NCBI GenBank assembly: GCA_002269645.1
Contig: NIVC01000293.1
Location: 1 to 64,000 of the forward strand
From: Macrostomum lignano
Taxonomy: Eukaryota
Reading direction: 5' to 3'
Length of the DNA stretch: 64,000 nucleotides
Notes under the pieces: generated by a model
Database searches by the model: none
Seen by the model: the letters and a program-made list of their open reading frames with translations, nothing else
Told to the model about the DNA's origin: nothing
Program-made: the position numbers and the translations under genes
Shown here: positions 316 to 63,990 of the stretch, piece by piece
Numbering within the stretch: position 1 is the stretch's first letter
Layout: the number at the start of each line of letters is the position of its first letter

Positions 316-3300
316 ATGAAAACATGCACCAGATTTTTTCGTTACTTTCAACTCATTGTGTTTGGCTTGTTATTTTGGTTTTCTCCATCCGGTACGTTTA
401 TTCTGTTTTGATTAGAGTCAGAAAAAACCAGTTTGCTCTTGCTAAAACGTGGGTTACTAAAAACGCAGAGTGCTGTTCCGGTAGGACGCTTTACTCGTCA
501 TCTGGAACGATCGCGTGCCCCTCCTCTGGAGGCCAGTATTCAAACAATTTGGATGTTTCCTGGTCTATTCGACCACGTGGTGTCAGCCGAATCCGATTCA
601 GCAAGCTGGATGTGGATTCGTGCTGCGACAAAGTTTTAATTTATGAAAGCGCAATCTACGCATCAAGCAGCTCAGAGAAGTTTCGACTTGTGCATGCAAA
701 CGCGACTGAGTCTGAGTTCTGGGTGAATTCCCTTTGTTGTGCGGTTTCGAAGTGACGGGTTTCACACGAGATCCGGATTTCGGCTTTCTTACGAACGCCA
801 GTGGGAATCGATTCCAGGTGAATTTTATGCCTTACGTTTATAACAGCACTCTGGTTGACTTTTGCTGATTTATTTGATCTCGGATGAAAATGGAATTTCA
901 GCTGCTACTGAGGTCATTCGGCAGAGAAGCGGTGTCAGACGGAGCCATCCAGATGTCGGGTCCTACCGCAATAACTACAAAAAAGCTTGGAGTATTTACG
1001 TGCCCAGAAATTCCCGTGTTTTCATTCGATTCACAAAGTTCAACACGGAATCTGGCCGCGACTATCTTAGGATATATTCAGGACTTGTTCCGCGATATCA
1101 ACACACGGCTCTGCAAGCGATTTCAGGCAATCATAGAATTCTTCATCCGTCATACACGTTTTCGCATAGCGTTACCCTAATTTTCACTACTGACGGCTCT
1201 GTTGTCCGTGAAGGGTTCGAATTTGAGTTCAATGTCCGTGAGTGATACAAGACGTCAACAGTATCTGGCAGTTTTTTCAGTTTTATTCAATTCAGAAGTT
1301 AAACTGTTCAGTGCAGAAAATATAAGTTAAAAGTTATGCAATCTTATGTTTATAGTTTCTTTTCTCGGCCAGATACGGACAGAGAAGCAACATAGTTTCC
1401 ATAGTTACTCGTAGTTACATAAATCTGAATAAGTCTCAACATTGTTTATGTTGATGCAGGTTATTTGTACTACGGATTATGCGCCATCGGCCTATCGATT
1501 ATAATGGATAATTAGTTTTAAGCAATGAGAAGAGAACTCTTATAAATTCTCTTTAGATTACATAAATATTATCAACTTCCACAAAAAATCTTAACGCTGC
1601 TACATTTACTCAGTTTGATACTCTTTACAGATGATCATGAATTACTGTGGATCTTTTCAAAATGGACCAGAATGGCCATAGGTGGCTCGAAATTCAGTTT
1701 TTCACTGCTTTCTATGGATCGAAATGTATCAGCTAGGTGTTACTTAGATCTTGAATGTGGAAGGCAAACTTCGGAGATCGCAATGAATTCCGTAAGCCGG
1801 GCATTTATCTGCATTAAATTTTCGAAAAAAGTGCTATATACGAGCGTAATTACTGGTTTAAGTTTTTCTTATAACTTTGCATAGTGAAGGTAATATCTCT
1901 TGACCTTTCAAGTTTGCATTCAAAAGCTTGGACAAATTTAAAGAGCCTCAGATTATATATGAATTGTTTTTGCAATTCCTCCAGACGATCTACTCACAAT
2001 GAAGATCAGTTAAAAAATTGTACCTGTTTTCTGGAATCATCTCAGACACTGCTGTCTGCATTCGAAACATCACGTGCAGATTCCGTGGCAGCGGTATCAA
2101 TGAACTGATTGAATCGACTCCAGCACCTGATGGTAAACAACTTTCTTCAATCAGTTTTTGAGACTCTGCATAGATGTTTTTGAAGAAGCGAAGTGTCTGT
2201 ATTGCAATATTAGCAAAGCGGTTCAGTAACTGTAGCAGATTTTGATTATCCTGCTCTAGTTTCCTTCATACATATGAATAACTTTCAGTTAAGCCAGCTT
2301 CACTTGAAATCAGCCTGATAAAGCCTGAGCTGTGGAGCCTCTCAGATAGTTTGATTCGGTTTCGAGCTGTGTCTCAAGCCGAGTGTCGGCGAGTGAGGCA
2401 TCGCTGCGAGCTGAGGCTTTTCAATGGAAGCGCAGTCACTGCTGTGCAAGTGAAGCGGGTAAGAATAATGTAACAATGCGTAGTTAAAATATTTAGCATA
2501 ATATAATATACTTAGAGTAATTGCTATGATAGGCGTGTACAACTAAACGATGTACACTGTAGGCCCGTACTGATATGCAGATATACGCAATTGTATTTTC
2601 CTTCAATTTACAATACCCAGCTAGCGTATTTTTATTCTGATACAATTGCTACGTCAAAACTTCAGCAAGCATCACAGCCACGTATTTCTCAGTGTGTGAG
2701 CAGAGTTCAAACAGATTTTACTCTGCTGGCTGAGCTCATCGACACAGTCAATTCTACGATAATTTGTTACAAGCAAGCCGGAACAGTCAACTATTCTCTG
2801 CCGGCTATGCAACTGCGTGAGTTGAGTTAAGATTATGAAGTTAATGCATAAATATATGCGTATAATATAAATAATGTATATAGAGCTCATTAAAAACAGG
2901 AATTTTATGTATGCGCATAAAATCACTACGTTAGAATATATAACAGTATATATATAAATATACATAAAAATATATATATATAATATATATATATATAAAT
3001 ATAATATATTAGAATATATAATATATATAACTATAGAATCTTCATACGAGCGTAGAAGCATGATTAGCGATATAGAAAAAAAGCGAGAACGATTACGAAA
3101 GATTTTAACTGATTTATTTTTGTGATTAATTTCATTAATTTTTAATCAAATAATTAACTTATTTGACTCTGTTTTTAAATGAAGTAAAAAGGTGACATTT
3201 GCGAGAGTAGGTTTGCAGAGTTTAAATCATTTGTTCAACGTATGTCATATGTACCAGCTGATTTATTCAATGTTTGGAATGTCGAATAAAGAAAGGTATT

Positions 3301-4771
3301 ATTATGATCGGCTCCTTACAATGGTCATTTCCTTATATCAGCTGTTCGAGAAATTCAATGGAGATTCCCAGAGTCTACTGAGATCGCTGCGGGTGCTCCA
3401 ATGCGCATTTTATTAACAACAGCTGCAAGCATCCGAGGCCTGTCAGCGAAATGTCGGCTGCACCAGGAGTGCGAGAATGGAACCATCGAAGTCCCGATCC
3501 GTGTTGTAAGATATAATCAAAATATTTGATACTTAATGAAGGCAAAAAGAAATAATAATTTTGGCTAAACATATTTGGCATCCGATTAATGTCTATTAAG
3601 GTTGATACTATTTGATATATACTTCTTGTGCGAAGTACTAGCCATATTTCCCACAATATGCATACACCATCAATTATGAAGTTCACTCGTCGTTTTACCT
3701 GCTACCACAGGATCGAATCGTCTCGACATCTTCGGGAAAAGTATTCCAGTTTTTTGGACGATGGCAGCGTCAAGTGTGCAGCCGCAATGTGTCTTGCGCA
3801 TTCTCTGTGCCAGGAATGCTCGGTTCGATTGAATTCAGCCAATTACCTCCAGGTATTGCTGTTGACCTCTCTTGTGATTCATTTATTTCATAACAGCTCA
3901 TAAAAACATGCGTTCTTAATGCATTTACAACCGTTTCTCCGTTTTATTGATTTCAGTTGAACCAAATGACTTACAGCTTAAGTTGATTGATCCTGAGCTG
4001 TGGCTACTCAACGGAGCAATTCAGTTCCGTGCGGTTTCCAAACACGCCTGTCCCAGTGTGAGGCACCGCTGTGAGCTGAGGACGGCTACTAACTATTCGA
4101 TTCCCGCGACGCTAATAAAGAAGGTTGTTTTTGTCTGTTGGCAGCATTATGTAGCTCGCTATGTGCAAGATAGTATGCTTTGCTTAACTTCAGGATGTCT
4201 CGAAGCCCATCGGGCCGCAGTGCTTCAGCTCGGTGATGTCGCAGTTCTTGGCGTTCGCTCAGCCATCAGACGTAGCGGGTTCCACCGTGAGGTGCCGCCT
4301 GCTCAACGGCAGCTCTGCGCTGCTCGTGCTTCCCGAAAAGGGTTTTGGTGAGTTTCGCAGCTGATTTCAGATGTTATACACGAGAAAGCAGCCCTGCTTT
4401 AAATATCGCCTCCATCAACAGGAGAGACGAGGCTGGCCGAAGTCTGGGAGCGGCCACTGCTAGCAGCTTCATCAACTACGGCTGTTCTCGCCATCATTGC
4501 ACTGGTAGCAGTGGTGGCCTGCTTTGTGCTGATGAGATCTGGTCGGTGGCCACCTTGGAAAAAATCTCCGGATGCGTCAGTAGTGAATGAGTCAATGAAG
4601 ATGCAAATGACAGTCAGTAACCAATATTATGGCGAATCAGCAGGCATTGTAAGCAGCTTTAATGTGATTTGAGGCACCAGACTTCATCATATTTTCAGCA
4701 ATGTCAAATTATTAATCATGCTTGCATCCGACTTTCAGCCTGATGACTCAACCGGAGTTTACGTCACGTGA
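316..4771 (+). pseudogene. Paralog A1: CUB-domain type I membrane protein (SP-CUB-CUB-W-P-W-P-TM-tail), disrupted
   Basis: Predicted exons 316-391 (signal peptide MKTCTRFFRYFQLIVFGLLFWFSPS), 469-817, 902-1237, 1631-1791, 1985-2132, 2289-2458, 2666-2816, 3342-3505, 3711-3852, 3957-4123, 4194-4347, 4422-4648 (TM AVLAIIALVAVVACFVLM), 4739-4771 (PDDSTGVYVT*). All are GT-AG with matching phases. Lesions: 2-nt deletion at ~729 relative to A2 (TGA at 753-755) and in-frame TGA at 2000-2002. Confidence 0.85.
2860..3030. repeat. AT-rich / (TA)n low-complexity tract in an A1 intron
   Basis: Runs of TATATA and AATATAT; the matching A2 intron lacks the long tract. Confidence 0.75.
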
Positions 4772-10588: not shown

Positions 10589-10955
10589 CTCCACTCCTCT
10601 CTACCCTCTCTCCCCTCTACCCTCTCTCCTCTCTACCCTCTCTCCTCTCTACCCTCTCTCCCCTCTACCCTCTCTCCTCTCTACCCTCTCTCCTCTCTAC
10701 CCTCTTTCCTCTCTACCCTCTCTCCTCTCTACCCTCTCTCCTCTCTACCCTCTCTCCTCTCTACCCTATATCCTCTCTACCCTCTCTCCTCTCTACCCTA
10801 TATCCTCTCTACCCTCTCTCCTCTCTACCCTATATCCTCTCTACCCTCTCTCCTCTCTACCCTCTCTCCTCTCTACCCTCTCTCCTCTCTACCCTCTCTC
10901 CTCTCTACCCTCTCTCCTCTCTACCCTCTCTCCTCTCTACCCTCTCTCCTCTCCC
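10589..10955. repeat. CT-rich minisatellite built from CTCTACCCTCTCTC units
   Basis: Pyrimidine-rich tandem array; it produces the spurious SLPS/TLSP/LYPL ORF 10448-10969. Confidence 0.92.
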
Positions 10956-16006: not shown

Positions 16007-19000
16007 ATGAAAGCAGGCACCAGATTTTTTTGTTACTTTCAACTCATTGTGTTTGGCTTGTTATGTTGGTTTTCTTCATCCGGTACGTTTATTCTGTTTT
16101 GATTAGAGTCAGAAAAAACCAGTTTGCTCTTGCTAAAACGTGGGTTAATAAAAACGCAGAGTGCTGTTCCGGTGGGACGCTTTACTCGTCATCTGGAACG
16201 ATCGCGTGCCCCTCCTACGGAGGCCAGTATTCAAACAATTTGGATGTTTCCTGGACTATTCGATCACGTGGTGTCAGCCGAATCCGATTCAGCAAGCTGG
16301 ATGTGGAGCCATGCTGCGACAAAGTGCTCATTTATCAAAACGCAACCTCAGCCTCAAACAGCTCAGAGAGGTTTCGACTTGTGCATGCAAACGCGACTGA
16401 GTCTGAGTTCTGGGTGAATTCGCCCTTTGTTGTGCGGTTCCGAAGTGACGGGTTTCACACGAGATCGGGATTTCGGCTTTCTTACGAACGCCAGTGGGTA
16501 TCGATTCCAGGTGAATTTTATGCCTTACGTTTATAACAGCTAACACTCTGGTTGACTTTTGCTGATTGATTTTTATCTCGGATGAAAATGGAATTTCAGC
16601 TGCTACTGAGGTTATTCGGCAGAGAAGCGGTGTCAGACGGAGCCATCCAGATGTCGGGTCCTACAGCAATAACTACAAAAAGGCTTGGAGTATTAACGTG
16701 CCCAGAAATTTCAGTGTTTTCATTCGATTCACAAAGTTCGACACGGAATCTGGCTGCGACTATCTTAGGATATATGCAGGAATTGTTCCGGGATATCAGC
16801 ACACGGCTCTGCGAGCAATTTCTGGCAGAAATACAAGTCTTTATCTGTCATACACGTTTTCGCATAGTGTTACCTTCGTTTTTACTACTGACGGCTCCTC
16901 TGTCCGTGAAGGGTTCGAATTTAAGTTCGGTGTCTGTGAGTGTTACAATTAGTCTAAATTATCTTTCAGTTTTTTCAGTTTTTATTTTTTGGATTAGTTT
17001 ATGTAGAAAGTTCAGAAGTTAGGTCACTAATTGTCCTGTGCAGAAAATCTAGACTAAGTTTATGTATTTTTGTTTAAAATGTATTCTTTTGGCCAAATAC
17101 GGGCAGAGAAGAATATTTCTACTCCGTAGATGCGCCATAGGATTATCGAACATTGTATAATGAATTACCGCTTCTAAGCAATGAAAAGGAACTTACAGAA
17201 ATTTCCTTTCAATTACATAAAAAATAGACTTACACAAAAACGTTTACAGCGCTGCATTAACTCAGCATGATACTATATTTACAGATTATCCTGAATTAAA
17301 GGCCATCTTTCCAAAATGGACCGGAATGGCCACAGGTGGCTCAAAATTCAGTGTTTCACTGATTTCCCCGGATCAAAATGTATCAGCAAGGTGTTACTTA
17401 GATCTTGAATGTGGAAGCCGAACTTCGGAGATGGCAATGATTTCAGAAAAATTGGCTCAACCGATTTTCTTCAAACTTGCACCATTCGATCAGAAATTTT
17501 CCTGGGACGGTACATGCATCTTGGCTAAGAAATTGCTCAATGTTAAAGGGATTAAATATTCGAAAAACATGCTTTTTTGCAAAGGTCAAGCAGCTCTTTC
17601 GACCTGAAATGCATTGTAAGAATGCTAGAGAAAAAACTGTCTGACTGAATTTCAATTCTGATAAAGATTGCATCACAACAAGTTGAAAACAGTGCCGAAG
17701 AAATGCACACACGACTTGATTTAAATTGCGTAACCAATATTGCTAACTTGAACTGAGACTGATACTGGCTGACTGAGAAATTGATTATGTCATAACTTTT
17801 TACTTTAATTGACTTGCTGTAAGAATTGAATTATAAGGGCCACAATTCATGTACTCCAATTGAAAAGAGATACGTGACTCCATGTTAAACACTAAAGAGC
17901 CACCATGTCAAACATTAAAGAGCCACGATGTCGAACATTTAAGAGCACCATGTTAAACATAAAGGAGCCACCATGTCGAACATTAAAGAGCCACCATTTC
18001 AAACAGTAAAGAGCCACCATGTCAAACATAAAAGAGCGACCATGTCAAACATTAAAAAACCACTTTGTCTAACATTAAAGAGCCACCATTTCAAACATTA
18101 AAGAGCCACCATGTCAAACATAAAAGAGCCACCATGTCAAACAATAAAAAGCCACTTTGTCTAACATTAAAGAGCCACCATGTCAAACATTAAAGAGCCA
18201 CCATGTCAAACATAAAAGAGCCACCATGTCAAACATAAAAGAGCCACCATGTCAAACATAAAAGAGCCACTATGTCAAACATTTAAGAGCCACCAAGTCA
18301 AACATTTAAGAGCCACCATGTCAAAAATTCAGAAGCCACCATGTCAAACATATATGTGACTTTATGTCAAACTTTAAAGAGCCACTATTTCGAACATTAA
18401 ATAGCCACTTTGTCAAACATTAGAGAGCCGCCGTGTCAAACATAAAAGAGCCACCAGGTTAAACATTAAAGAGCCACCATGTCAAACAATAAAGAGCCAC
18501 CATGTCTAACAGTAAAGAGCCACCATGTCGAACATTAAAGAGCCATCATGTCAAACAATAAAGAGCCATCATATTGAAAATTAAGGAGCCACCATGTCAA
18601 ATATTAAAGAGCCACAATGTAGAACATTAAAGAGCCACAATGTCGAGCATTAAAGAGACACCATGTCAAACATTGAAAAGCCACCATATCAAACAATAAA
18701 GAGCCAGCATTTTGAACATTAAAGAACCACCATGTCAAACAGTAAAGAGCCACAATGTAGAACATTAAAGAGCCACCATGTCGAACATTAAAGTGCCACA
18801 ATGTCAAGCATTAAAGAGCCACCATGTCGAACATTAACGAGCCATGATCTCAAACAGAAAAGAGCTACCAAGTTAGACATAGAAGAGCCACCATGTGAAA
18901 CATATATGTGACTCCATGTCAAACATTAAAGAGCCACCGTTTCCAACATTAAGGAGCCACCATGACAAACATAAAACTGGCACGATGTCAAACATTAAAG

Positions 19001-22000
19001 AGCCACCATGTCAAACATAAAATAGCCACCATTTCAAACACAGGAGAGACATTTTCAAATGTAATAAGAAGCGTCATGCCAATCATAAAGGAGCCCCTAG
19101 AAAGCTAAAAGGAAATGTTGCACTCTATACTTTTTGTCTGGTGGATGCTTGCTATTTAAAGATAGATACTTGCTATCAATTGGATGCTTGCTATCTGGGG
19201 GTTCTTTCTATCTGGGGTGCTTGCTATCTGAGGGATGCTTGCTATCTGAGGGTGCTTGCTATCTGGGGGTGCTTGCTATCTGGGAGGAGGGGGGATGCTT
19301 GCTGTCTTGGGATGTTTTCTTTTTGCATTGCGCTTCATTTGAGCAGTTTTTCTGTTGTCTTTGTGAAGACTCTATTTGACGGTTTTTTTACTTGTAGAGA
19401 ACAGAAGTTCTATCCAGATGTCCCCCATCGGGGGGCGAAGATTGCTAGTTAGGTCACTAATTGTCCTGTGCAGAAAATCTAGACTAAGTTTATGTATTTT
19501 TGTTTAAAATGTATTTTTTGGCCAAATACGGGCAGATAAGAATATTTCTACTCCGGATTATGCGCCATAGGATTATCGAACATTGTATAATGAATTATCG
19601 CTTCTAAGCAATGAAAAGGAACTTACAGAAATTTCCTTTCAACTACATAAAAGTTTTGACTTACACAAAAACGTTTACAGCGCTGCATTAACTCAGCATG
19701 ATACTATATTTACAGATTATCCTGAATTAAAGGCGATCTTTTCAAAATGGACCGGAATGGCCACATGTGGCTCAAAATTCAGTGTTTCACTGATTTCAAT
19801 GGATCAAAATGTATCAGCAAGGTGTTACTTAGATCTTGAATGTGGAAGCCGAACTTCGGAGATGGCAATGAATTCCGTAAGCCGTGCATTTTTCTGCATT
19901 AAATTTTCGAAAAAAGTTGCATATATTTACTGGTTTAAGTTTTTCTTATAATCTTGCATAGCGAATGTAATCTTTTTCGACCTTTTAATGTTTTAATGTG
20001 AAATTAAAACCAAATTTACGGAGGTCTTAAATTATTTGAATTGTTTGCCATTCCCTCAGACGATCTACTCACAGCGAAGATCAGCTCAAAAATTGTACTG
20101 ATTTTCTGGAATCGTCTCAGATACTGCTGTCTGCATTCGAAACATCACGTGCAGACTCCGTGGCAGCAGTATGAATGAACTGATTGAATCGATTCCAGCA
20201 CCTGATGGTAAAACGTATTTAATCATTTTCTGAGACTGTAGATCTGCAAAAAAATTTGAATAGGTGAAAGTGTCTGAATTCGATAATTAGCAAAGCCATA
20301 CAATAACTGTATCAGATTAGTGATTATCATGCCCTAATTCCTTTTACAAGTATGAATCTGATTTTCAGTTGACCCAGTCTCGCTTGGAATTAGCCTGATT
20401 AAGCCTGAGCTGTGGAGTCTCTCAGATGGTTTGATTCGGTTTCGAGCTGTGTCTCAAGCCGAGTGTCGGCGAGTGAGGCATCGCTGCGAGCTGAGGCTTT
20501 TCAATGGAAGCGCAGTCACTGCTGCGCAAGTGAAGCGGGTAAGAATAATGTAATAATGCGTAGTTTAAATATTTAGCAAAATATAATATACTTAGAGTAA
20601 TTGCTATGATAGGCGTGTACAACTAAACGATGTACTGTAGGCCCGTACTGATATGCAGATATACGCAATTGTATTTTCCTTCAATTTACAATACCCAGCT
20701 AGCGTATTTTCATTCTGATACAATTGCGGCATAAAAACTTCAGCAAGCATCACAGCCACGTACTTCTCAGTGTGTGAGCAGAGTTCAGACAGACTTTGCT
20801 GTGGTGGCTGAGCTCATCGACACAGTCAATTCCACGGTAGTTTGTTACAAGCAAGCCGGAACAGTCAACTATTCTCTGCCGGTTATGAAACTGCGTGAGT
20901 TGAGTTAAGATTATGAAATCAATGCATAGATGAATACAAATAATAGGAATTTAGTATATAGAACTTCATTAGAACAAGAAGTATATATATTCGCATAACG
21001 TCACTTGAATCGAAATTGAACGAAAAAAGCAATCTAACATGCTATTACTATTACTTTATTCATCGTAAAGTTGATTCTAAAATAAGAAATACTTTATTCG
21101 AATATTAGGCGTTTCTGACTCTGTTTTCAAATAAACATGTGAAATTGGCGGCAATTTTGAGAGTTCTAATCAGGTGAAAAATGTGTCCTATGTACAGCTG
21201 ATTTATTCCATGCTAAAAATTGAAAATAAAAGAAAAGATTCTCAGCTCCTTGCAATGATCATTCTCTTATCCCAGCTGTTCGAGAAATTCAATGGAGATT
21301 CCCAGATTCTGCTGGAATCACTGCGGGTGCTGCAGTGCGCATTTTGTTTACAACAGCTGCAAGCATCCGAGGCCTGTCAGCGAAATGTCGGCTGCACCAG
21401 GAGTGTGGGACTGGAACCATCGAAATCCCAATGCGTGTTGTAAGATGAAAAATCAAAGTATTTGACACCCAACGCAGGCAAATAGAAATATATATTTAGG
21501 CTAAACATTAGTTTGCATCAGATGAAAGCCTATTAAGGTTGATACTATTTCGTACACTATTCTTGTACTAGTCATATTGCTCACGTTATTCACACCATCA
21601 ATTATTAAGCTCAATCGTCGCTTTACCTGCTACCACAGGATCGAATCGTCTCGACGTCTTTGGGCAAAGTATTCCACTTCTTTGGAAGATGGCAGCGTCA
21701 AGTGTGCAGCCGCAATGTGTCTTGCATATTCTCTGTGCCAGGAATGCTCGATTCGATTGAATTCAGCGAATTACCTCCAGGTATCGCTTTTGAACTCTCT
21801 GGCTAATAGTTTCCTTCATAACAGCGCATAAAAAGCAAGGCCCTTGATTCATTTAAAACAAACTATGTAATCAAAGCCCGTTTCTGCGTTTTTTAATTGA
21901 TTTCAGTTGAACCAAATGACTTACAGCTTGAGTTGATTGATCCTGAGCTTTGGCTACTCAATGGAGCGATTCAGTTCCGTGCGGTTTCCGAACTCGCCTG

Positions 22001-22733
22001 TCCCAGTGTGAGGCATCGCTGTGAGCTGAGGACGGCCACTAATTATTCGATTCCTGCGACACTGATAAAGAAGGTTGTTTTTGTCTGTTGTCAGCCTTTT
22101 TTGTAGCTAGCTATTTGTGCAAGATAGTATGCTTTGCTTAACTTCAGGATGTCTCGAAGCCCACCGGACCTCAGTGCTTCAGCTCGGTGATGTCGCAGTT
22201 CTTGGCGTTCGCTCAGCCATCAGACGTAGCGGGTTCCACTGTGAGATGCCGCCTGCTCAACGGCAGCTCTGCGCTTCTCATGCATCCCGAACTGGGTTTT
22301 GGTGAGTTTCGCAGCTGATTTCAGATGTTATACACGAGGAAGCAGCCGTGCTTTAAATATTGGCATATTGCCTCCATCAACAGGAGAGACGAGGCTGGCG
22401 GGAGTCTGGGAGCGGCCACTGCTAGCAGCTTCATCAACTACGGCTGTTCTCGCCATCATTGCACTGGTAGCAGTGGTGGCCTGCTTTGTGCTGATGAGAT
22501 CTGGTCGGCGGCCACCTTGGAAAGAATCGCCGGATGCGTCAGTAGTGAATGAGTCAATGAAGATGCAAATGACAGTCAGTAACCAATACTATGGCGAATC
22601 AGCAGGCATTGTAAGCAGCTTTAATGTGATTTGAGGCACCAGACTTCATCATATTTTCAGCAATTTCAAATTATTAATCATGCTTGCATCCGACTTTCAG
22701 CCTGATGACTCAACCGGAGTTTACGTCACGTGA
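16007..22733 (+). CDS. Paralog A2: CUB-domain type I membrane protein; 656 aa if the W1 exon pair is skipped, otherwise truncated
   Basis: Predicted exons 16007-16082, 16160-16510, 16600-16935, [19716-19876, 20060-20207 with TGA at 20099-20101], 20369-20538, 20744-20894, 21276-21439, 21639-21780, 21907-22073, 22148-22301, 22384-22610, 22701-22733. All other exons are open and phase-compatible. CUB motifs LDVEPCCDKVLIY and FRSDG...GF are present. Confidence 0.8.
17441..19448 (+). mobile_element. 5'-truncated non-autonomous Helitron-like element
   Basis: 3' hairpin CCCCC-ATC-GGGGG, then CTAG (19445-19448) followed by T. Shares GGCTCAACCGATTT, GGGACGGTACATG, GATTAAATATTCGAAAA and an 18-bp minisatellite with the element at 36242-37680. 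Confidence 0.78.
17878..19040. repeat. 24-bp minisatellite (AAAGAGCCACCATGTCAAACATTA), roughly 45-50 degenerate units
   Basis: Contiguous tandem units without spacers, inside the Helitron-like element. Confidence 0.95.
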
Positions 22734-24779: not shown

Positions 24780-25261
24780 TGATGCTTGCCATCTGGGAGA
24801 TGCTATCTGGGGGATGCTTGCTATCTGGGGGATGCTTGCTATCTGGGGGATGCTTGCTATCTGGGGGATGCTTGCTATCTGGGGGATGCTTGCTATCTGG
24901 GTGGATGCTTGTGCTATCTGGGAGATGCTTGCTATCTGGGAGATGCTTGCTATCTGGGGGATGCTTGCTATCTGGGGGATGCTTGCTATCTGGGTGGATG
25001 CTTGCTTTCTTGGGGATGCTTTCTATTTAGGGGGAATGTCTGTTATCTTTGTGAAAGCTTTAATATGTCATCTTTGTCAATTTTAGAAAAAAGAGATTCA
25101 TAGGAAACATCTTTGTCCGTGACAATTTTACTTGATTAATGTGACTTTTAAAACTAAAGAAAAAGGAGTTAGGTCCTGAGAAAATGTGAATTTTAATTTT
25201 TTCCATGAATAATTTTTGCTCCTTGCTTATTGGGCCCCGAAGGAGGGCACTAGATTGCTAG
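24780..25261 (+). mobile_element. 3' part of a Helitron-like element with 18-bp minisatellite
   Basis: (TGGGGGATGCTTGCTATC)n at 24780-25030; hairpin GCCC-CGAAGGA-GGGC at 25234-25248; AGATTGCTAG|T end at 25261. Confidence 0.72.
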
Positions 25262-26803: not shown

Positions 26804-29737
26804 CTACTTATTAGTAGCTGATATCTGTTCGCATACCATTTGTACGAGCGTACTACAAAAATCAGAAACGACAGCGAGACAGCTCCCTTATCAGGGCATA
26901 CCCGTAGATATCTGAAATCCTGCATGCAAGCGTCCAAGTTACATTGCAACCAGATGTGTAGCCAGAAGGTTAAGTATACGACAACCCTTCAAATGAAAAA
27001 GTGCTCCAATGGCAGCAGAAACACTCATTGGCAGTAGCTTTTGGCACGCTGAAGATACGGGCTGAGAAAAAACCTGGCTAAGAATACGAGCTAAGCATAC
27101 TCAAGCTATTCAGCCTAAGCCCGGATAAAATGAAGTACGATCGTAGCTTTGTCGTCGAATTGTCAGACCCACCGCGCAATCATTTTAGCCTTCGATCTGA
27201 TTAGTTGTTTACAGTACTTGTTCTTTATTTTGTGCAATTTCACATACTTCTGAAAAAACTGTGAAAAAACTTCATTTCTTCTAAGGATGAACGAATTTGA
27301 CCAAAATTATCAACACAAGATACCATAAAATACTGATTTTTGCGAAATTCATTATCTTTATTTCGAGATGATGTGCAACACTTTATATTCTTTGACCCCC
27401 TGCACGTGGCCTCTATCATACTGCTGTCGCTACCAGTCTTGATTAACCACTGGGTGGCAACGCAGCTCAGGGAGAGGTAAGGATGACTGGTATTTCAGCT
27501 CTGCCGTACTCTGTTCCTCTCCCCCGCCCTCCGCAGGACTCAACCGTATGGGCATCAAGGCGGTGGCCACGGCTAATCTCAAGTCATGGCTAGTCAGTTC
27601 AAGGAAGCATTTAATGTTTAAATGTCTCCTTTAACCCAGATCTCTCCGATATTTTTAAGCACGGGAATTTCTGCCACCTCATCCATGCCTATGGGCTACC
27701 GGGCGACCGATCACCCACTTTCTAGAGAGGGACAGAACTGCGAACGACGGCACCACCGGATCTTCCTGCGCGACATCGTAGCACCAGCTGCCCGTGATTG
27801 CCATGGGTCTGTGGAATGGGCGGCAACACCTCCCATCTGCACCCAGTATACTCCAGGAAGCCTTGCAGCTATGTTGTGTATTGGATAGTCGATGTGTCGG
27901 TTGATTTGGTTTTACTGAGAGCTCAATCCATCTATTCAATAATGCTAAAATGATTTCATTTATGCGCACTGGCTTTGTGTACGTTCTACGTACTCATGGA
28001 CAAAGAAGACAAACGCTATACTGGCAAATCGCGAGGCCGATTTCTGGAAATAAATTTTCGCTACAAAATACAGTATGAGACACTCGCGATTTTCAATATG
28101 AGTTCCAGAAGGTGCGAGACTGCGGTGGATGTTGTGCTAAAAAACTTAAATCTTGAAATCTTGAGTGTAGGTTCCTTCTGCTTTAGTTGCCCGTGCCCCG
28201 ACTAAGTAAGGAAAATGGCAGGTTCATTTAAAGTTACATATGGTTAGAATTGAAGTTCTCCGATTCAGTGTTTATATACATCTATTGAATCGGAAAACTT
28301 ACGAGTAATAACCAATTATATTCGCTTGCAGAAGCCTTCAATATTTACATTCCTGCTAATCCTTGTGATTCGTCTACCGGTGAAGTTCGCTCTACGAGAG
28401 TAGTTATCTTGTTTATGGTTTCCGTTCGGGAAACACTTGATGGACGCTGGCATAGATTGAAAGGCCGTTCTTATTTTAAATACATGCAGATGTATTATTT
28501 CTTACGCGTAACTTCAGCTTAATATTTTTGGAATTTAAGGTCTAAATATATAAATGTAAAGAAAGTTCAACTTGAAATTGCTAAGGTTTAATAAAGTTTA
28601 CAAACTGGTCCGAAAATTGCAAATGACCCGTGAAAACTCAAGCAATTATTTCACTTCATATTATCACTTGGCTGTGTTAATTTAAAAATGTTAGTAACAA
28701 CAGCAAATTTGTTCCTAGTATAGCTTCTATTGATAATATCTGCAATGTTTTTGTAAATGCAACTCAAAAGATTAAATGTTTATTGAAGATCAAGTCTAAT
28801 TCTGGAGATGACCATTTGCTGAGAGGCATCGCCAAATACAGATTCTATTGAAAATATTAAAAGGTTGTTGAATAAAAAATACACAATGGTCGTGCATACT
28901 CTTATTAATTTCCTTTAAGAGCGTAAGCCATGAGAACATGCTGCTGTATTGATGTCACCATGAGAACTTACATGGATTTACACAATTAGGTTCGAAGTTT
29001 TTTACTGCTAACCAAAGCTACCTACATGAAAGTGCTACAAGTAAATAGAAATCGCAAAGAAACATCTGCTAAATATTTAACCTTAAACCACGACTACATT
29101 TACCTAGTAGTGTTTCCGTAGCCATCAGCTTTCTTTTGCCAAAAGATCTGTATCAATGTTAAAGACTTCGCCCAAGCTCGTTGTTATCGTAGTTACTGCT
29201 ATTTTTACAGTTTGGTCATGTGATGAAAGTCTTGTATAATTAAAACTTTGCTAGAAAAGCAAGCAATGAAAGTGTTTTAACAGATTTAATCTCTAAGAGA
29301 AAATTTCTTCTTGCTCTGACCAAAATGTCAGAGTCCAAAAAAAATTTACTCTTATAGTACATGTATAAAAGCTTCATTATATGAATAAACTTTTTAAACG
29401 CTTTAGGTCCAGATTGAAAGTTTATCAACGAGAGCAGTAAATTAAAATCATGCTGGAATGAAAAACGTTTACTTGCCGCTTCTATCCGCACATATTCGTA
29501 GTGCAACCTCCAGCACATTCGGGGAAGGCTGAAAAATGTTAGCGTCTTAAAGGCTGCAGTTGGCTGCTGTCTGGTGATTTTCACTTGCACCCGTCCTTGT
29601 TTATTTAAAACGCGTCACTGAAGCGCATTAGCGGCAGTCCAAACTTAGAAACTTGCTGATTTATTAAACTTTGAACTATTCATTGCAACTTGCAGTTTGT
29701 TGAAAGTATGCTCATATTAAATCATTTTCTGCAACAG

Positions 29738-35313
<5,576 letters not shown>

Positions 35314-36241: not shown

Positions 36242-37680
36242 TCTATATACTAGTTGTGAGATGTCTCTGTCTGTCTGTGTGATGAATTTTTTAAAAAAAC
36301 GGCTCAACCGATTTGCGCCATTTGATCACAAATTGTCAGCAATCGGTATGGTTAAAATTATTAGTGTCTACGTCATTTCCAAGTACAGTTAAATTAAAAA
36401 AAGACTGTATTTTTACTATCTAAATAGTGTATTTTTCTGGCAGTCAGAGCTCAAACTTCAATTTTATGTCTGGCCAATTTTTCTGCTTCTGCTGATACTC
36501 AAGTCCAGAGTAGGGAAGAGAGAGCAGTCCTAACCAGAGGTCACATTGCTTAATCCTCACTCTGTCTATCTATCGAAACTATCAAAACCATGGCCCGTCG
36601 TGGAGGTGCTAGCAATCTAAAAAGGAGCCGTGTAGCTAAGCAAAAACGTCAAAGCGAAACGGAAGTCCAGCGCGAGGCCCGGCTGCAAGCTGGTCGCCAG
36701 CGCGAAGCTGAGCGTCTGGCCAAGGAGTCTGACGAAGACACTGAAGCCCGACGGATGCGTTGGAGAAACCCTTCAGAAAAGAGAAGGGCTTCTGAGCCCA
36801 AAAGATTTCAAATGTGCCCGGGACGGTACATGTATTTTTACGTATTAAGCTCTAGCTCATTGCTAGGGGGATTAAATATTCGAAAAACTGTACTTTCCCT
36901 ATCTAATTAGTGTATTTTTCTCGCAGTGAGAGCTCAATATGTCTATGGCCATAGACTAAACTTTAATTTCTTGAGCTGATGCTACGAGCTATAAATAATT
37001 AAATATTCGAAAACATGCCCTTTTGCACAAGGGAGCGATATCAGCCAGTGCACTTTAAAAGTATTGAAGTATTGCGCCACTTTATAGTACAGTATATGCA
37101 AAGGAGAGAGAAATGCTCAGTGGCTGCGTGCTGTTGGGGGGATGCTTGCTGTCTGGGGGATGCTTGCTGTCGAGGGATGCTTGCTGTCTAGATCTGGGGG
37201 ATTGCTTGCTGTCTAGATCTGGGGGATTGCTTGCTGTCTAGATCTGGGGGATTGCTTGCTGTCTAGATCTGGGGGATTGCTTGCTGTCTAGATCTGGGGG
37301 ATTGCTTGCTGTCTAGATCTGGGGGATTGCTTGCTATCTATGGGATGCTTGCTGTTTGGGGGATTGCTTGCTGTCTGGGGGGATGCTTGCTGTCTGGGGG
37401 ATGCTTGCTGTCTGGGGGATGCTTGCTGTTTGGGGGATGCTTGCTGTCTGGGGGGATGCTTGCTGTCTGGGGGATGCTTGCTGTCTGGGGAATGCTTGCT
37501 GTCTGGGGGATGCTTGCTGTCTGGGGCATCGCTTGCTGTCTGGGGCATCGCTTGCTGTCTGGGGGATGCTTGCTGTCTGGGGCATCGCTTGCTATCTGGG
37601 GGATCGCTTGCTACATTACATCATTATTAAAATTATTACATTCTTTTTTTTGCTCCCCAACGGGGGACGTAGATTGCTAG
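36242..37680 (+). mobile_element. Complete non-autonomous Helitron-like element
   Basis: A|TC 5' end (TCTATATACTA...TCTGTCTGTCTG), 3' hairpin TCCCC-AACG-GGGGA, CTAG|T end. Internal 18-bp minisatellite at 37135-37610. ORF 36590-36910 starts with charged ETEVQREARLQ...ESDEDTEARR repeats resembling RepHel N-termini. Confidence 0.85.
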
Positions 37681-42400: not shown

Positions 42401-44547
42401 TCTGCATGTACACTCTGAATCGTCTCCAGTTTTTGAGCTCAGCACTGAACAACATTCAGCAACGAATCATACTATTGAGTTTGTCTTCCCGGAAGCTGTC
42501 AATATTGTCTTTGTTATCAACCGTATTGCACTACTATCGAGCTTCGTGTTTGAGTTTAGTGTCGGTGCGTTTTCGAATTCAATTTATCTAGTACTAATAT
42601 CTAAAAAAAGCGGAATGATAAGAGTTATTGTGGGGCTTTAAGGTTGCGAGGCAAAAATTTTGTACCAATAAACCACAGGTATCATAAGTAAAATGCTGTA
42701 ATCATTTCCTAATTTTAACAGTCTATGCATGTATTGAAGCATACGATGGTTCTTTAGTATCTTGTTCAACAAGAGATATAGGAAAAATGCTTGGCTTCTA
42801 AGGCTAATCACTATACTAAGCGTAAAATTACACAAACCGTACCACCTAAATTCTGCAGGAAGAACACTATTGCCCGTTGTGCCAGTTTGGTCAGGAACTG
42901 CTTTAAGTTTATCCTCATTAAGATTGCTCGTGAGATCCGCAACAGCCGATATTCAGGTCTACTGTAAATTTCAGCCGAAGTTTTCCCAGGAAGATGTCTT
43001 CGTACAGGTATGGCAGCTCTTTTTGTTAGCAAAATTAAACGTAAAAGTCCCGCCAAAAAAGCTAAAGATTCTAGATACGACTCATACTTTCAGCTAACTC
43101 AGGTGGAACCAAACGTTGTCGAATCAGAGTTTGTTATCGGCTCCTCAGCTATTCAAAGCATCCACAATGTCTGCATCCATCGAGTGACTTGCATAGCTAC
43201 CTGGGCGGTTGGTTTGCCTAGGAAGGTTGAACAGATTGTTGCTCTACTCCCAGGTGAGAGAAAAATTAGCCAATTAGTTGCGTGATTTATTTAGTCATAA
43301 ATCCTAAAATCGAATGCGTCTCTTCAGCTGATCCAGAAAATGCAACAGTCACGTTAGTTCAACCCAAGTTGTTGTCCTTCGGCATCCTTCAGTTCCGTGT
43401 GATTTCGGAGAACTCCTGCCCAAGAGTGATACACCGGTGTGGGCTGAAAACGGCCAATGGAAGCAATATTCCCGCTATACTGATCAAAAAGGTTCGCATC
43501 CAAACAAATGACTTCACAAACAATTTCACTTCATCATTTAATCTCAATCGCACATTTCTTTTCACAGACCGTGTCAGACCCAGTTCTACCAGAGTTTCGC
43601 AGCACAGTGACGTCACAGTTCTCAGCGTTCGCTCATCAAGCAGTCATCAAAGGATCAATCATTAAGTGTCGCCTCTTTAAAGGAAACTTTTTGGAGCGTT
43701 CTGTGTCGCACCTATGTGGCGAAATTCAAACTGCTGCTTTGACACCAAAATCAGCTAAGCTTCCAGGACTCTGGAAGAGATGGGCTCTTGTAGCTTCATC
43801 CACAGTAGCAGTCATCGTCATCATTGCTTTGTCAGCTCTCTCGCTTGCGCTGCTTTTCAGGCGAAAGAAATATAGGTCTCATAGGACTGTGAACAGAAGC
43901 ACGGTTTCAGCATCGAGGTTCAGTCATTATCAAACTGGGGAATATGAAAACTCGGTATGTAATCTGCGGTTTTTCAGGATTATTTATGATATAGTGTCCA
44001 AATTGGGAGATAGACTAGCAGAGACAGAAGTTGGCGTTGGAGTGAAGCTATTTCTGCGGGTTTGATGAAGGTGTTGATACTGTCGATGTATACCGAACTG
44101 TTATAGTACCCAGCTAGCTAAGACAACGATCAGCCAGTACGGTCCCTGGAGTAGACTGAGCTTACGAGCTAAATTAGAGTCGACAGCGATACGTTCTAGC
44201 TTTGGCAGGAACCCGCAAGCTCGCCCTGAAAGATGAATTAGAGATTCCTGCCAGAGTCCTGTGTGTATGTGACATAATTCAAATCATAAGGGAGATTATG
44301 CAATGTCTGTATAGCTCTACTAATGGGAGCAAAGATAGGTTACCTTACAATCAACTGCAACTTGAAAGACTTCTTCAAGAAGAGAATGGTTTAAAAAAAC
44401 TCTTGACGGCAAGAGACTAGATACATTATGGGGCCTGTACATTACCCTGCTTATTTTAACATGATAATGACAAAATATCAATAGAATCATGCTAAAAACT
44501 GTTTAAATTTTCAGGGCATCAGTCTTACAGGTGTTTATGTCACCTGA
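39448..44547 (+). CDS. Paralog C: SP-4xCUB-W-P-TM-tail, 809 aa, apparently intact
   Basis: Predicted exons 39448-39520 (MNFQIVTKIVSVIAILFSKTVRVT), 40020-40388, 40554-40898, 41376-41783, 42223-42564, 42859-43007, 43094-43253, 43328-43491, 43568-43954 (P-b fused with TM), 44515-44547 (GISLTGVYVT*). Sum 2430 nt, open. Confidence 0.85.
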
Positions 44548-47940: not shown

Positions 47941-48602
47941 AGCTACATTTATGCAAAATGTTAATAACTACATGCAACTTTATTGAAATGCTCTTTATGA
48001 TCTTATTTGAAAGTACTTTCCCCGCGGCACTCTTGATTTCTCTGAACTGAAAGACTAGGTAATTTTTTGGGTGGCTCTCTACTTCAATTTAAAAATATAA
48101 GCCAGAGCCGATCCTTTATATTCTGTGTGGTCCTTTTATTGCAATCTTTCACAATAATGTATACCTTATTTCTGACCGACCCTGCGGGTGGCGGTACAAT
48201 CGCAATCGCGAACTAACGTGTACTTAAGTTGAAATTCAAATCATTTTGATACATTCGTTTGTAAAGTTTCCATAAATACAATAAACAGTATCAATTAATG
48301 CTACAATTATTAGAAAAGGATATAGATTTCAGAACCAATTTTGTATTTCAGAGAGTCAGAAATAACAGGTTCACGTGTAATTTATAGTTAAGAGCTCGTA
48401 GTTTAGAAGTTAGATTTCGAACTGTTATCTAACAAAACGCTAATAAATGTTTACGGAGGATGTATATGCGATATGAATAAATAATTAAGCCACTAAATAT
48501 AAAGCCACTAATATCGCCAAACTATCTTTGCTCTACCATTCGAGATTCGATTGATTATCATCTTAAATTGAAATTGCTAATAAGAATCTAAAATCCTGAC
48601 AG

Positions 48603-51600: not shown

Positions 51601-53587
51601 TTAGACGCGGAGTTTTGCCCGCCGTTTCCCGTTTCTTTAATTCGGTTTAAGAAAGCAAAGCGTTCTGACTTGGGGGTGGGGGGTTCACAAACTCGAAATT
51701 TCACAACGTCGAAAGCACCTTCTTTCACAAGGTCGAAATTTCATAACCGAAGTTTCATGTTATGAAACTTCGACCTTATGAAATCTCTTGCTAGAGTTTT
51801 CGATGTGAAATTTCAACCTTGTGAAGTTTCGACCTTGTGAAATAATTTAATTTTCGACGTTAGGAAATTTTGACCTTGTTGAAGCAGCGCCCTCTGACTT
51901 GGTACTCTGGGAAGCTGAATTGACACAAGAAGGAAAGAGAGAGAAACCGTAAGAGGACAGAAAGCTTTCGGCCAGTCGGGCAACTCCATCCCAGGATAGC
52001 CTAATTCAGGACTCGAAAAAACGAGAGTAGGAATTTAGAAAGCTAAAAAATTTAGATTACGAGCTAGTGTTTGCCGCTTGACACTGCTACCACGAATACT
52101 TCATTGTGCAAGGAGTCTTAACTGGTAGTAAAATCTGGATCGAATAGCTAGAAGTAGGGCCTACAAAAACTTGGTGGCAGCGTTAGGATATAGTGTATAA
52201 ACAAATTAGCCTTAGAACACTTGGTGGGATTTACAAACGTAGAGGAAAAGCCCTCGTACAGTACATACTAAGCAATCCAAATTTGAATGGCTACTCAGAT
52301 TCGTTTCCGGTCTTCATTTTATTTCAGGTCGCAATGTGAAGCCGCTCATTGACACCTGGTCAGGTTCAACCGAAAGTCTTAGCTCTCTCAGAGTACTCGT
52401 TCATTCATCCACTGCAGATGCTCAGACCAGCTGCACAATATTTTCTATGTGCTCAGAGCAACCTGTTACTTTTAAAGTAATATTTAACATATTTGTTGTG
52501 TTAATTTTATATTGTTTGCGGATGTGCTTTGCTTATTACATGTGCCGATGTTGTGTCATATTTATGCCTTGCAGCTAAGGACTATGTACCAAAACGTAGT
52601 CGAATCTGAATTTATAATCGACTCTTCAGCAATTCAATCCATTGGAAATTTCTGCATTCGCAGAATCTCTTGCACTGTCACATGGGCCATTGGACTCCCA
52701 CGAAAGGTCGAGCAGGAGACAGTATTACCATCACGTGAGAGAAAGTTTTTAATCTCATATAATCTGATCTTAAAAATGAATTAATCTTAGATGTGTTTTA
52801 TTCCAGCCAACCCAGAGAATGTGAAACTCGAATTAGTTCAACCTAGACTGCTGTCATTTGGAATAATTCAATTTCGTGCCGTGTCCGAGAACTCCTGCCC
52901 TAGTGTAACACATCGATGTGAGCTGAGGACGTCTAATGGTACCATTATTCCCGCAATGCTAATAAAAAAGGTTGGCATTCTTTTTTGAATAAAACTGTTG
53001 ATATAATTACCAGTTTAGACGTCATTTTTTAAAGTTATATTATATAGGAAATAACGAACACAGTTGCTCCTCGGTGTATTGGAACGGTAACGTCTCTGTT
53101 GTCCGTGTTTATTAAACCATCAATTATCTCAGTGTCAGCTATTAGCTGTCGTTTGTTAAACGAAAGCCTCTCCGAAAGTTTTATCCTGAAATCGTACCAT
53201 GGTGAGTGCAAAGTGCATATCACTAAAAGCATTAAATTGCACTTCACTGTCTGATCAGACTCGATAAACATCAATTTACAGAAGCAGAGCGGAAGAAAAT
53301 TTTGGAGAGGCCCAAGGTATTATTTACAAAAATAGTTGGTGTCCTCGTCATCATTATAATCGCTTTGCTGATTTCGATCACCGCGCTATGCTGCAGACGA
53401 CGCAGAAATACTCCAGCTCAAACTGCGATGAGACAACCGGCTTCAAAATTCAGGTTTAGTCGCTACGTTACCGAGGATTACGAAAACTCAGTAAGTTAAA
53501 AAACTAAATGACAGATTTAAAATACGGCCTACCTAGGGCACATCTGCCTTACAGGATTCCCACGTTGCCAGCGTGTACGTCACCTAA
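48603..53587 (+). pseudogene. Paralog D: SP-4xCUB-W-P-TM-tail, disrupted
   Basis: Predicted exons 48603-48654 (MNIVVLTLIIRYWITVA), 49353-49715, 49792-50136, 50395-50751, 50879-51215, 52328-52476, 52575-52734, 52807-52970, 53048-53201, 53282-53490, 53555-53587 (DSHVASVYVT*). In-frame TAA at 49938-49940 in CUB2; the CUB4 exon is 337 nt with a frameshift near 51090. Confidence 0.87.
48789..49093. repeat. MITE-like element with an internal ~19-bp tandem (TTTAGCGxTTGTGAAG)
   Basis: About 12 units; imperfect terminal inverted repeat TTCACAAGCGCT / AGCGCTTGTGAA; lies in intron 1 of D. Confidence 0.7.

Positions 53588-59720: not shown

Positions 59721-63990
<4,270 letters not shown>

What the first reader, a model, noticed from the sequence alone, without database searches (positions are those of the whole stretch)
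1631..3852. Second unrecognised two-exon domain (W type) with twin C-x5-C motifs, always placed before a P domain
First half has W(S/T/N)G and C-x5-C (CYLDLEC, CRLHQEC, CRLRPAC, CTIFSMC, CNLQNAC). Second half has another C-x5-C (CIRNITC, CSRNVSC, CARDAQC, CIRRISC, CISSVAC, CVSRIIC). It has the same 1-0-1 intron phasing as P. Copies: 1631-2132, 3342-3852, 19716-20207, 21276-21780, 33261-33651, 42859-43253, 52328-52734, 61407-61846, 62344-62777. W never appears without a following P, which suggests a W-P structural unit. Most of these exons are invisible or mis-framed in the supplied ORF track.
Basis: partly seen in the sequence, partly recalled or inferred. Interest (0 to 1): 0.72.

Follow-up and report, generated by a model that had tools for sequence, protein, structure and literature searches.

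The report
Unannotated Ig-like domain in flatworm receptors
The "W" exons are real, transcribed coding exons in a tandem cluster of Macrostomum lignano (flatworm) membrane-protein genes; they encode a very divergent immunoglobulin-like domain that no domain library recognises, which is a tidy but modest find.

Summary
Each has two exons with intron phases 1-0-1, conserved cysteines, and a P domain directly after it.

The window is Macrostomum lignano DNA. It carries six tandem paralogous genes built as signal peptide, CUB x2 or x4, (W-P) x1 or x2, TM helix and a short tail. Gene 3 is GenBank PAA86082.1, from an RNA-seq-derived annotation that splices W and P exactly as deduced.

W and P match no Pfam family and no PDB sequence. 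An exhaustive HMMER search of 1.84 billion proteins found the family only in M. lignano. AlphaFold2 and Foldseek place the W-P tandem on two-Ig-domain chains (probability 1.0). W alone gives a weaker model that also looks Ig-like. My reading is that W is a lineage-specific, disulfide-stapled Ig-like domain and, together with P, forms the stalk that carries the CUB domains.

- **HYR link:** the resemblance to HYR_4C is limited to the second C-x5-C strand.
- **Broken copies:** both W1 copies in genes 1 and 2, including 1631-2132, carry in-frame stop codons.
- **Cysteine exceptions:** gene 4 lacks one cysteine, and gene 6 W2 has C-x7-C.
- **Orphan:** a half-W exon without a P lies at 17290-17454.

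It is a new member of a known kind, of modest interest.

The parts
1631..1791 (+). Gene 1, W1 exon a (phase 1 in, phase 0 out); WTR motif, CYLDLEC
1985..2132 (+). Gene 1, W1 exon b (phase 0 in, phase 1 out); CIRNITC; in-frame TGA at 2000-2002, so this copy is broken
   Evidence: alignment to the intact paralog P0008
3342..3505 (+). Gene 1, W2 exon a; CRLHQEC; no W-x-G motif
3711..3852 (+). Gene 1, W2 exon b; CSRNVSC
2289..2816 (+). Gene 1, P1 (exons 2289-2458 and 2666-2816), directly after W1
3957..4347 (+). Gene 1, P2 (exons 3957-4123 and 4194-4347), followed by the TM exon (ORF 4403-4669) and the terminal mini-exon ending VYVT* at 4757-4771
17290..17454 (+). Orphan duplicate of W1 exon a, with no exon b and no P; it flanks an insertion at 17445-19542 in gene 2
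19716..19876 (+). Gene 2, W1 exon a
20060..20207 (+). Gene 2, W1 exon b; in-frame TGA at 20099-20101
21276..21439 (+). Gene 2, W2 exon a
21639..21780 (+). Gene 2, W2 exon b
20369..20894 (+). Gene 2, P1 (two exons)
21907..22301 (+). Gene 2, P2 (two exons)
33261..33409 (+). Gene 3, W exon a (HWSG, CRLRPAC)
   Evidence: exact match to PAA86082.1
33492..33651 (+). Gene 3, W exon b (CARDAQC)
34021..34416 (+). Gene 3, P (exons 34021-34187 and 34263-34416)
42859..43007 (+). Gene 4, W exon a (VWSG; CKFQPKF, second Cys lost)
43094..43253 (+). Gene 4, W exon b (CIHRVTC)
43328..43720 (+). Gene 4, P (exon a 43328-43491; exon b from 43568, running without an intron into the TM region; third Cys lost)
52328..52476 (+). 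Gene 5, W exon a (TWSG, CTIFSMC)
52575..52734 (+). Gene 5, W exon b (CIRRISC)
52807..53201 (+). Gene 5, P (two exons)
61407..61588 (+). Gene 6, W1 exon a (RWNG, CNLQNAC); an alternative phase-1 acceptor lies about 30 nt downstream
61684..61846 (+). Gene 6, W1 exon b (CISSVAC)
61924..62297 (+). Gene 6, P1 (two exons)
62383..62552 (+). Gene 6, W2 exon a (NWTG; C-x7-[10 protein letters not shown])
62636..62777 (+). Gene 6, W2 exon b (CVSRIIC)
62887..63290 (+). Gene 6, P2 (two exons; the internal intron needs the alternative donor GTACGA to stay in frame; third Cys replaced by Tyr)

Best explanation
W is a lineage-specific, highly divergent immunoglobulin-like beta-sandwich domain of about 100 residues. 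It has seven predicted strands and four cysteines arranged as two C-x5-C pairs.

It is encoded by two exons (phases 1-0-1) in a tandemly duplicated family of Macrostomum lignano type I membrane proteins. Their architecture is signal peptide, two or four CUB domains, one or two W-P pairs, one TM helix, and a short Tyr-containing tail. P is a second, better conserved Ig-like domain of the same size and exon plan.

Shown:
- The exons are real, spliced and transcribed.
- W is under purifying selection in the gene 4 and gene 5 copies.
- It is extracellular by position.
- It is predicted to be all-beta, and its best structural matches are Ig-like domains.

Inferred:
- W-P pairs form a short-linked, rod-like Ig stalk that holds the ligand-binding CUB domains away from the membrane.
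- The two equally spaced Cys pairs lie on the neighbouring antiparallel C and F strands and form two cross-strand disulfide rungs (C1-C4 and C2-C3) that staple the sheet.
- W and P arose by duplication of one two-exon Ig module and then diverged, with W diverging faster.
- The phase 1-1 symmetry of the whole module allowed W-P units to be duplicated or skipped without breaking the frame.
For: Organism and gene family: database proteins from M. lignano are identical to window exons.

Transcription and splicing: PAA86082.1 maps 814/817 residues exactly to 29708-35313 with the W and P exon borders I deduced. The GenBank annotation derives from genome-guided RNA-seq assembly (PMC5730564).

Architecture: CUB Pfam hits lie upstream. 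A hydrophobic TM segment and tail lie downstream.

Fold of the W-P tandem: the AF2 model has pLDDT 77 and pTM 0.73, is all-beta, and has seven strands per domain. The top 50 Foldseek PDB hits listed are almost all two-Ig-domain chains such as TCR, Fab and Fc, with E near 1e-5, probability 1.0 and 204-246 aligned columns.

Fold of W alone: the top hits are nearly all Ig or FN3-type beta-sandwiches, including IgG Fc, IFNAR2 D2, IL-18BP, sDscam Ig1 and PD-1.

Sequence-level support: the W-P profile aligns W's last strands plus P's first strands to the F-G and A-B strands of bacterial Ig/PKD repeats. UniProt's automatic name for a gene 6 model is 'Ig-like domain-containing protein'.

Constraint: dN/dS for W is 0.14 between genes 4 and 5, although dS is saturated.

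Conserved features: three invariant cysteines and a fourth present in eight of nine copies, and a short W-P junction of the form x-(D/E/N/K/L)-P.
Against: - The W part of both models is of only low to moderate confidence (pLDDT 48-76 in the tandem, 62 alone).
- The W-only Foldseek E-values are weak (0.016 or worse) and TM-scores are 0.35-0.55.
- The MSA had only eight paralogs.
- No Ig, I-set, V-set or FN3 Pfam model matches any copy.
- The canonical B-F disulfide plus C-strand Trp signature is not evident.
- Disulfide pairing and the stalk role are inference, because no coordinates or PAE were available.
- Nothing is known about expression site or ligand.
Confidence: 0.78

Rival explanations
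1. W is a very divergent member of the HYR family (hyalin repeat, HYR_4C type), an Ig-related adhesion module that often accompanies CUB and sushi domains.
For: The exhaustive HMMER search hit a bacterial Calx-beta giant adhesin (P0013, E 4.9e-9). The hit falls exactly on its Pfam HYR_4C repeats. The alignment puts W's second C-x5-C on the C-N-N-S-V-T-C strand of HYR_4C, and W's Cys2 on another HYR_4C Cys. By general knowledge, HYR domains co-occur with CUB in metazoan extracellular proteins.
Against: The E-value is a sum over six near-identical repeats, each contributing only 7-21 bits. hhalign of W against those repeats aligns only the last 19 residues, with probability 3%. No W copy hits Pfam HYR or HYR_4C even at E <= 10. 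The first half of W, with the W-x-G motif and first C-x5-C, has no counterpart.
Confidence: 0.13
2. W is a new fold, or a disulfide-rich module unrelated to Ig, and the Ig-like prediction is a default beta-sandwich guess from a shallow alignment.
For: W has low pLDDT. There is no sequence-library match at all. The twin C-x5-C pattern is unusual.
Against: Two independent models with different first sequences (gene 3 and gene 5) give the same strand order. The listed structural neighbours of both models are overwhelmingly beta-sandwiches of Ig/FN3 type or closely related folds, and none is a CUB domain. Profile similarity to bacterial Ig repeats spans W's C-terminal strands.
Confidence: 0.07
3. 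The W exons are not functional coding sequence. On this view they are decaying pseudo-exons or chance ORFs.
For: W1 of genes 1 and 2 carries stop codons at different positions, and dN/dS between them is about 1.3. Some WormBase-derived models skip W exons.
Against: This applies to only two of nine copies. The other copies are open and have canonical splice sites. Those of genes 4 and 5 are constrained (dN/dS 0.14). W is included in RNA-seq-based proteins PAA86082.1, PAA76314.1 and PAA75150.1.
Confidence: 0.02

Closest known systems
Immunoglobulin-superfamily domains split into two exons (for example the Ig domains of NCAM; recalled from the literature, not tested here)
   Same: A beta-sandwich of about 100 residues. 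Phase-1 module borders allow shuffling, and an internal intron splits the domain. The domains sit in tandem in the ectodomain of a type I membrane protein. The best structural matches are Ig domains.
   Different: No Ig-family HMM matches. The canonical B-F Cys pair and C-strand Trp are not evident. Instead there are two C-x5-C pairs. The family is found only in M. lignano.
HYR / HYR_4C domain (Pfam PF02494 / PF23237)
   Same: An Ig-related extracellular module with four cysteines. It shares a C-x-x-(N/S)-x-x-C-x-(F/V) strand at the C-terminal end and, by general knowledge, is often found alongside CUB domains.
   Different: Only that one strand aligns (hhalign probability 3%). No Pfam match was found. 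The N-terminal half differs.
CUB-domain single-pass membrane proteins such as NETO1/2, SOL-1 and LEV-10 (general knowledge)
   Same: The overall plan is the same: N-terminal CUB domains, one TM helix and a short cytoplasmic tail.
   Different: Those proteins lack an Ig-like W-P stalk; they use LDLa or nothing in that position. No sequence relationship was found beyond the CUB domains, and function was not tested.

Membership tests
Immunoglobulin-like beta-sandwich (fold class) | Seven to nine antiparallel strands in two sheets, with structural neighbours that are Ig/FN3-type domains | tested here: met
   AF2 gives seven strands per domain. Foldseek places the tandem on TCR, Fab and Fc chains with probability 1.0 and E near 1e-5. 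W alone matches Fc, IFNAR2, IL-18BP, sDscam and PD-1 with probability up to 0.98 but E >= 0.016. Confidence for W is moderate.
Canonical IgSF sequence families (Pfam ig, I-set, V-set, Ig_3) | Match to the family HMM above the gathering score | tested here: not met
   No hit for any of nine W or nine P copies, even at E <= 10.
Canonical IgSF sequence families (Pfam ig, I-set, V-set, Ig_3) | B-strand Cys to F-strand Cys disulfide packed on a C-strand Trp | tested here: inconclusive
   In the model, W's cysteines lie on or next to the third and sixth predicted strands (C35 and C41; C75 and C81). No coordinates were available to measure distances. The conserved Trp of W-x-G lies before the second predicted strand (B), not in the third (C).
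HYR / HYR_4C (PF02494 / PF23237) | Match to the family HMM or a profile-profile match over the domain | tested here: not met
   No Pfam hit. hhalign against HYR_4C repeats of P0013 gives probability 3% over 19 columns. HMMER similarity is 7-21 bits per repeat.
HYR / HYR_4C (PF02494 / PF23237) | C-terminal Cys-containing strand motif | tested here: met
   W's C-(I/S)-R-N-(I/V)-(T/S)-C-x-F aligns with the C-N-N-S-V-T-C-T-V of HYR_4C. This is a motif-level resemblance only.
CUB domain (PF00431) | HMM match or jelly-roll structural neighbours | tested here: not met
   The Pfam CUB model hits several of the upstream CUB exons but never W or P. No CUB structure appears among the top Foldseek hits.
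Cytokine-receptor homology module (two FN3 domains, 4 Cys plus WSXWS) | WSXWS near the C-terminus of the second domain, and Cys pairs in the first | tested here: not met
   The W-(S/T/N)-G motif lies at the N-terminus of the first domain, and there is no WSXWS in P (alignments).
Macrostomum CUB-W-P-TM family (defined here) | W followed by P, preceded by CUB domains and followed by a TM helix; two-exon 1-0-1 structure | tested here: met

The most novel reading that the evidence does not exclude
W-P is a Macrostomum-restricted recognition module. On this reading W, the faster-evolving of the two domains and the one placed N-terminal to P, is a variable binding surface. The locally duplicating, birth-and-death receptor cluster would then serve partner, gamete or microbe recognition in this sexually conflicted hermaphrodite, signalling through the conserved tyrosine motifs in the tail (…VYVT-COOH, YENS, EVYLN).
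Probability: 0.12. Interest if true: 0.55.

Novelty: new member of a known kind. Interest (0 to 1): 0.27.

Why it matters
It defines two domain families, W and P, that are absent from Pfam. It explains about 200-400 unannotated residues in each member of a flatworm-specific family currently deposited as 'hypothetical' or 'CUB domain-containing' proteins. It also gives correct exon models for six clustered genes, where several public models skip or mis-frame exons.

For Macrostomum biology it flags an expanding, partly decaying cluster of surface receptors worth an in situ and RNAi screen. For domain evolution it is a clean example of a two-exon, phase-symmetric Ig module that has diverged beyond sequence recognition within one gene family. 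It does not reveal a new fold or mechanism.

Tried and rejected
- **Pfam:** scans of every W and P copy at E <= 10 found nothing.
- **PDB sequence search:** profiles of W and P gave only one chance-level hit.
- **W versus P:** profile-profile comparison found no detectable homology (probability 0.7%). Common origin therefore rests only on the shared exon plan and fold.
- **W and P versus HYR_4C repeats:** only a 19-residue strand aligned for W, and nothing for P.
- **Searches for relatives:** two word-indexed searches of 5.8 billion proteins and one exhaustive HMMER search of 1.84 billion representatives found only M. lignano paralogs plus two weak bacterial Ig/HYR hits.
- **W1 exon b acceptor:** I first placed it near 2010/2046 and concluded that the phases clashed. 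The intact paralog P0008 showed the exon starts at 1985 (20060 in gene 2) with normal phase 0, and that the real problem is an in-frame stop.
- **Rejected jobs:** I removed those residues.
- **Other domain families:** degenerate CUB and cytokine-receptor module were checked and rejected (see the membership test). ZP-N was set aside on the cysteine spacing only and was not tested beyond the empty Pfam scan.
- **Expression data:** I looked for the locus tags in full texts and in the supplements of two Macrostomum papers and found nothing.
Full report
**What the window is**

The region is intron-rich eukaryotic DNA of about 40% GC. A spliced W2-P2-TM query found only Macrostomum lignano proteins, and parts of them are identical to window exons.

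GenBank PAA86082.1 (BOX15_Mlig019335g1, 'hypothetical protein') maps 814 of 817 residues exactly onto 29708-35313. The three unmapped residues are split codons. The window is therefore M. lignano genomic sequence.

ORF inspection, tblastn and Pfam show six paralogous genes in tandem on the + strand:
- g1, about 316-4771: 2 CUB, 2 W-P
- g2, about 16007-22733: 2 CUB, 2 W-P; a 85-93% identical duplicate of g1
- g3, 29708-35313: 4 CUB, 1 W-P
- g4, about 39956-44550: 4 CUB, 1 W-P
- g5, about 49205-53590: 4 CUB, 1 W-P
- g6, about 59850-63990: 2 CUB, 2 W-P

Each gene ends with a hydrophobic TM segment preceded by a conserved W-E/K-R-P/W motif. After it come a short basic tail and, in most genes, a terminal mini-exon ending …VYVT*.

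**Checking the observation**

Each has two exons bounded by AG/GT. The intron before is phase 1, the internal intron phase 0 and the intron after phase 1, and P has the same plan. The one difference is g6 W2, which starts at 62383 rather than 62344 according to the database models.

The second-half C-x5-C is present in all nine copies. The first-half C-x5-C is present in seven. In g4 it reads CKFQPKF and in g6 W2 it is C-x7-C. The W-(S/T/N)-G motif is missing from W2 of g1 and g2.

An HMM scan of all 2047 six-frame ORFs finds exactly nine W(a+b), nine P(a+b) and one extra W exon a, all on the + strand. There is a gap between E <= 2e-9 and E >= 0.04. That HMM was built from the copies themselves. 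Leave-group-out HMMs still retrieve the other genes' W exons first, at the right model positions, with E of 1e-4 to 0.1. Sequence similarity between subgroups is faint (20-26% identity). Together with positional homology, identical intron phases and invariant cysteines, homology is secure.

The extra exon-a copy at 17290-17454 is a duplication fragment flanking a 2.1-kb satellite-bearing insertion in g2. It is the only W piece without a P.

**Two copies are broken**

I first thought W1 exon b of g1 and g2 could not be joined in frame. The intact 759-aa paralog P0008 (PAA76314.1, encoded elsewhere in the genome) shows the exon starts at 1985 in g1 and 20060 in g2, with a normal phase-0 acceptor.

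Both window copies carry an in-frame TGA at different positions. In g1 it is at 2000-2002 (CGA in the paralog) and in g2 at 20099-20101. g1 also has a frameshift in its CUB1 exon near 730.

dN/dS between g1 and g2 is about 1.3 for W1, against 0.67 for W2, 0.57 for P1 and 0.16 for P2. Between g4 and g5, W gives 0.14 and P 0.25, although dS is saturated. W is therefore a constrained coding module in the g4 and g5 copies, while the W1 copy inside the finding's own coordinates looks like a decaying or skipped exon pair. Skipping both W1 exons would keep the frame.

**Are the exons expressed?**

The GenBank annotation of this assembly was made from a genome-guided RNA-seq transcriptome (StringTie/TACO plus de novo transcripts, with ORFs called by TransDecoder; PMC5730564). 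Its proteins PAA86082.1 (g3), PAA76314.1 and PAA75150.1 contain W and P spliced exactly as I deduced. Older WormBase-type models skip or mis-frame several exons.

**What W is**

No Pfam family matches any W or P copy, even at E <= 10. No PDB sequence matches either. W and P are not detectably related by profile-profile comparison.

Two word-indexed searches and one exhaustive HMMER search of 1.84 billion representative proteins found ten M. lignano proteins, all from this CUB family. The only other hits were two weak bacterial ones.

AlphaFold2 on the g3 W-P tandem, with an MSA of eight paralogs, gave an all-beta model with seven strands per domain, pLDDT 77 and pTM 0.73. Confidence was 89-96 over most of P and 48-76 for W. 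Foldseek against the PDB returned two-Ig-domain chains such as TCR, Fab and Fc. E was near 1e-5, probability 1.0, and 204-246 columns aligned, so both domains contribute.

A separate model of W alone, with g5 as first sequence, repeated the strand order at lower confidence (pLDDT 62, pTM 0.54). Its neighbours were almost all Ig/FN3-type beta-sandwiches, with weak E-values of 0.016 or worse.

At the sequence level, the W-P profile aligns W's last two strands and P's first two strands with the F-G and A-B strands of bacterial Ig/PKD repeats in P0014. UniProt's automatic name for one g6 model is 'Ig-like domain-containing protein'.

I conclude that W and P are both divergent Ig-like beta-sandwich domains. 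For P this is well supported. For W it is moderately supported.

**The HYR lead**

The other bacterial hit, P0013, is a Calx-beta giant adhesin. The matched region coincides with its Pfam 'HYR-like domain with 4 cysteines' repeats. The alignment superposes W's second C-x5-C strand on C-N-N-S-V-T-C of HYR_4C.

The significance comes from summing six near-identical repeats. hhalign aligns only 19 residues at 3% probability, and Pfam's HYR models do not hit W. I keep this as a minor rival: a motif-level resemblance with membership not met.

**How it most likely works (inferred)**

W-P pairs are joined by short Pro-containing junctions. They sit between the CUB domains and the TM helix, so the simplest role is a disulfide-stapled Ig stalk that presents the CUB domains.

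The cysteines are equally spaced in both motifs (i and i+6, so on the same face of a strand). In the model they lie on or next to the third and sixth predicted strands (C and F), which are adjacent and antiparallel in an Ig fold. This suggests two cross-strand disulfide rungs, C1-C4 and C2-C3. It is a prediction, not a result.

W evolves faster than P (mean column identity 37% against 54%), so it could also contribute to binding. Conserved tail tyrosines (…VYVT-COOH, YENS, EVYLN) hint at signalling or sorting, which is speculative.

**Novelty and verdict**

The proteins are already deposited as hypothetical or CUB-domain proteins, but W and P are unannotated domain families with a known fold, restricted as far as can be seen to Macrostomum. 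This is a new member of a known kind. It is useful for annotation and as a lead to a lineage-specific receptor cluster, but it is not surprising to a specialist. Interest is about 0.27.

Noticed in passing
window 316-4771 (gene 1) and 16007-22733 (gene 2): Genes 1 and 2 are 85-93% identical segmental duplicates that look like decaying copies. Gene 1 has a frameshift in CUB1 near 730 and a nonsense codon at 2000-2002. Gene 2 has a nonsense codon at 20099-20101 and a 2.1-kb insertion. Assembly error cannot be excluded.
   Followed up: partly
window 17445-19542: This is an insertion in the intron after gene 2's CUB2. It carries a 23-bp satellite (17880-19040, about 50 copies) and is flanked by a duplicated copy of W1 exon a.
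   Followed up: partly
window 46091-47983: A GC-rich block (0.545) holds frameshifted retroelement ORFs, including reverse transcriptase (Pfam RVT_1, E 8e-11). It is a degenerate retrotransposon fragment between genes 4 and 5.
   Followed up: partly
window 4757-4771, 22719-22733, 53573-53587, 63976-63990; 35287-35313: Genes 1, 2, 5 and 6 share a conserved terminal mini-exon ending …VYVT-stop, and gene 3 ends …EVYLN. The tails of genes 4 and 5 also contain (E/D)YENSV. These may be phosphotyrosine or sorting motifs.
   Followed up: no
window 10594-10953, 24801-25035, 37174-37612, 48830-49044: There are intergenic minisatellites. An 18-bp unit (TGCTATCTGGGGGATGCT-like) recurs at two intergenic sites about 12 kb apart.
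   Followed up: no
window 33672-33987, 60276-60499, 63325-63581: Simple repeats lie inside the genes: (GTTA)n in the W-P intron of gene 3, (AGT)n giving a poly-Ser ORF just after gene 6's CUB1, and (TCTG)n in a gene 6 intron.
   Followed up: no
window 42859-43720 (gene 4) and 62887-63290 (gene 6 P2): Gene 4 has lost one cysteine in W (Cys2) and one in P (Cys3), leaving an odd number in each domain, and has gained a Cys near the end of P. Gene 6 P2 has Cys3 replaced by Tyr and needs a non-standard donor (GTACGA) to stay in frame.
   Followed up: partly
whole window: Within this cluster, genes with two CUB domains have two W-P pairs and genes with four CUB domains have one. The out-of-window paralog P0016 (2 CUB, 1 W-P) breaks the rule. 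All modules appear to be bounded by phase-1 introns, which favours unit duplication and loss.
   Followed up: partly
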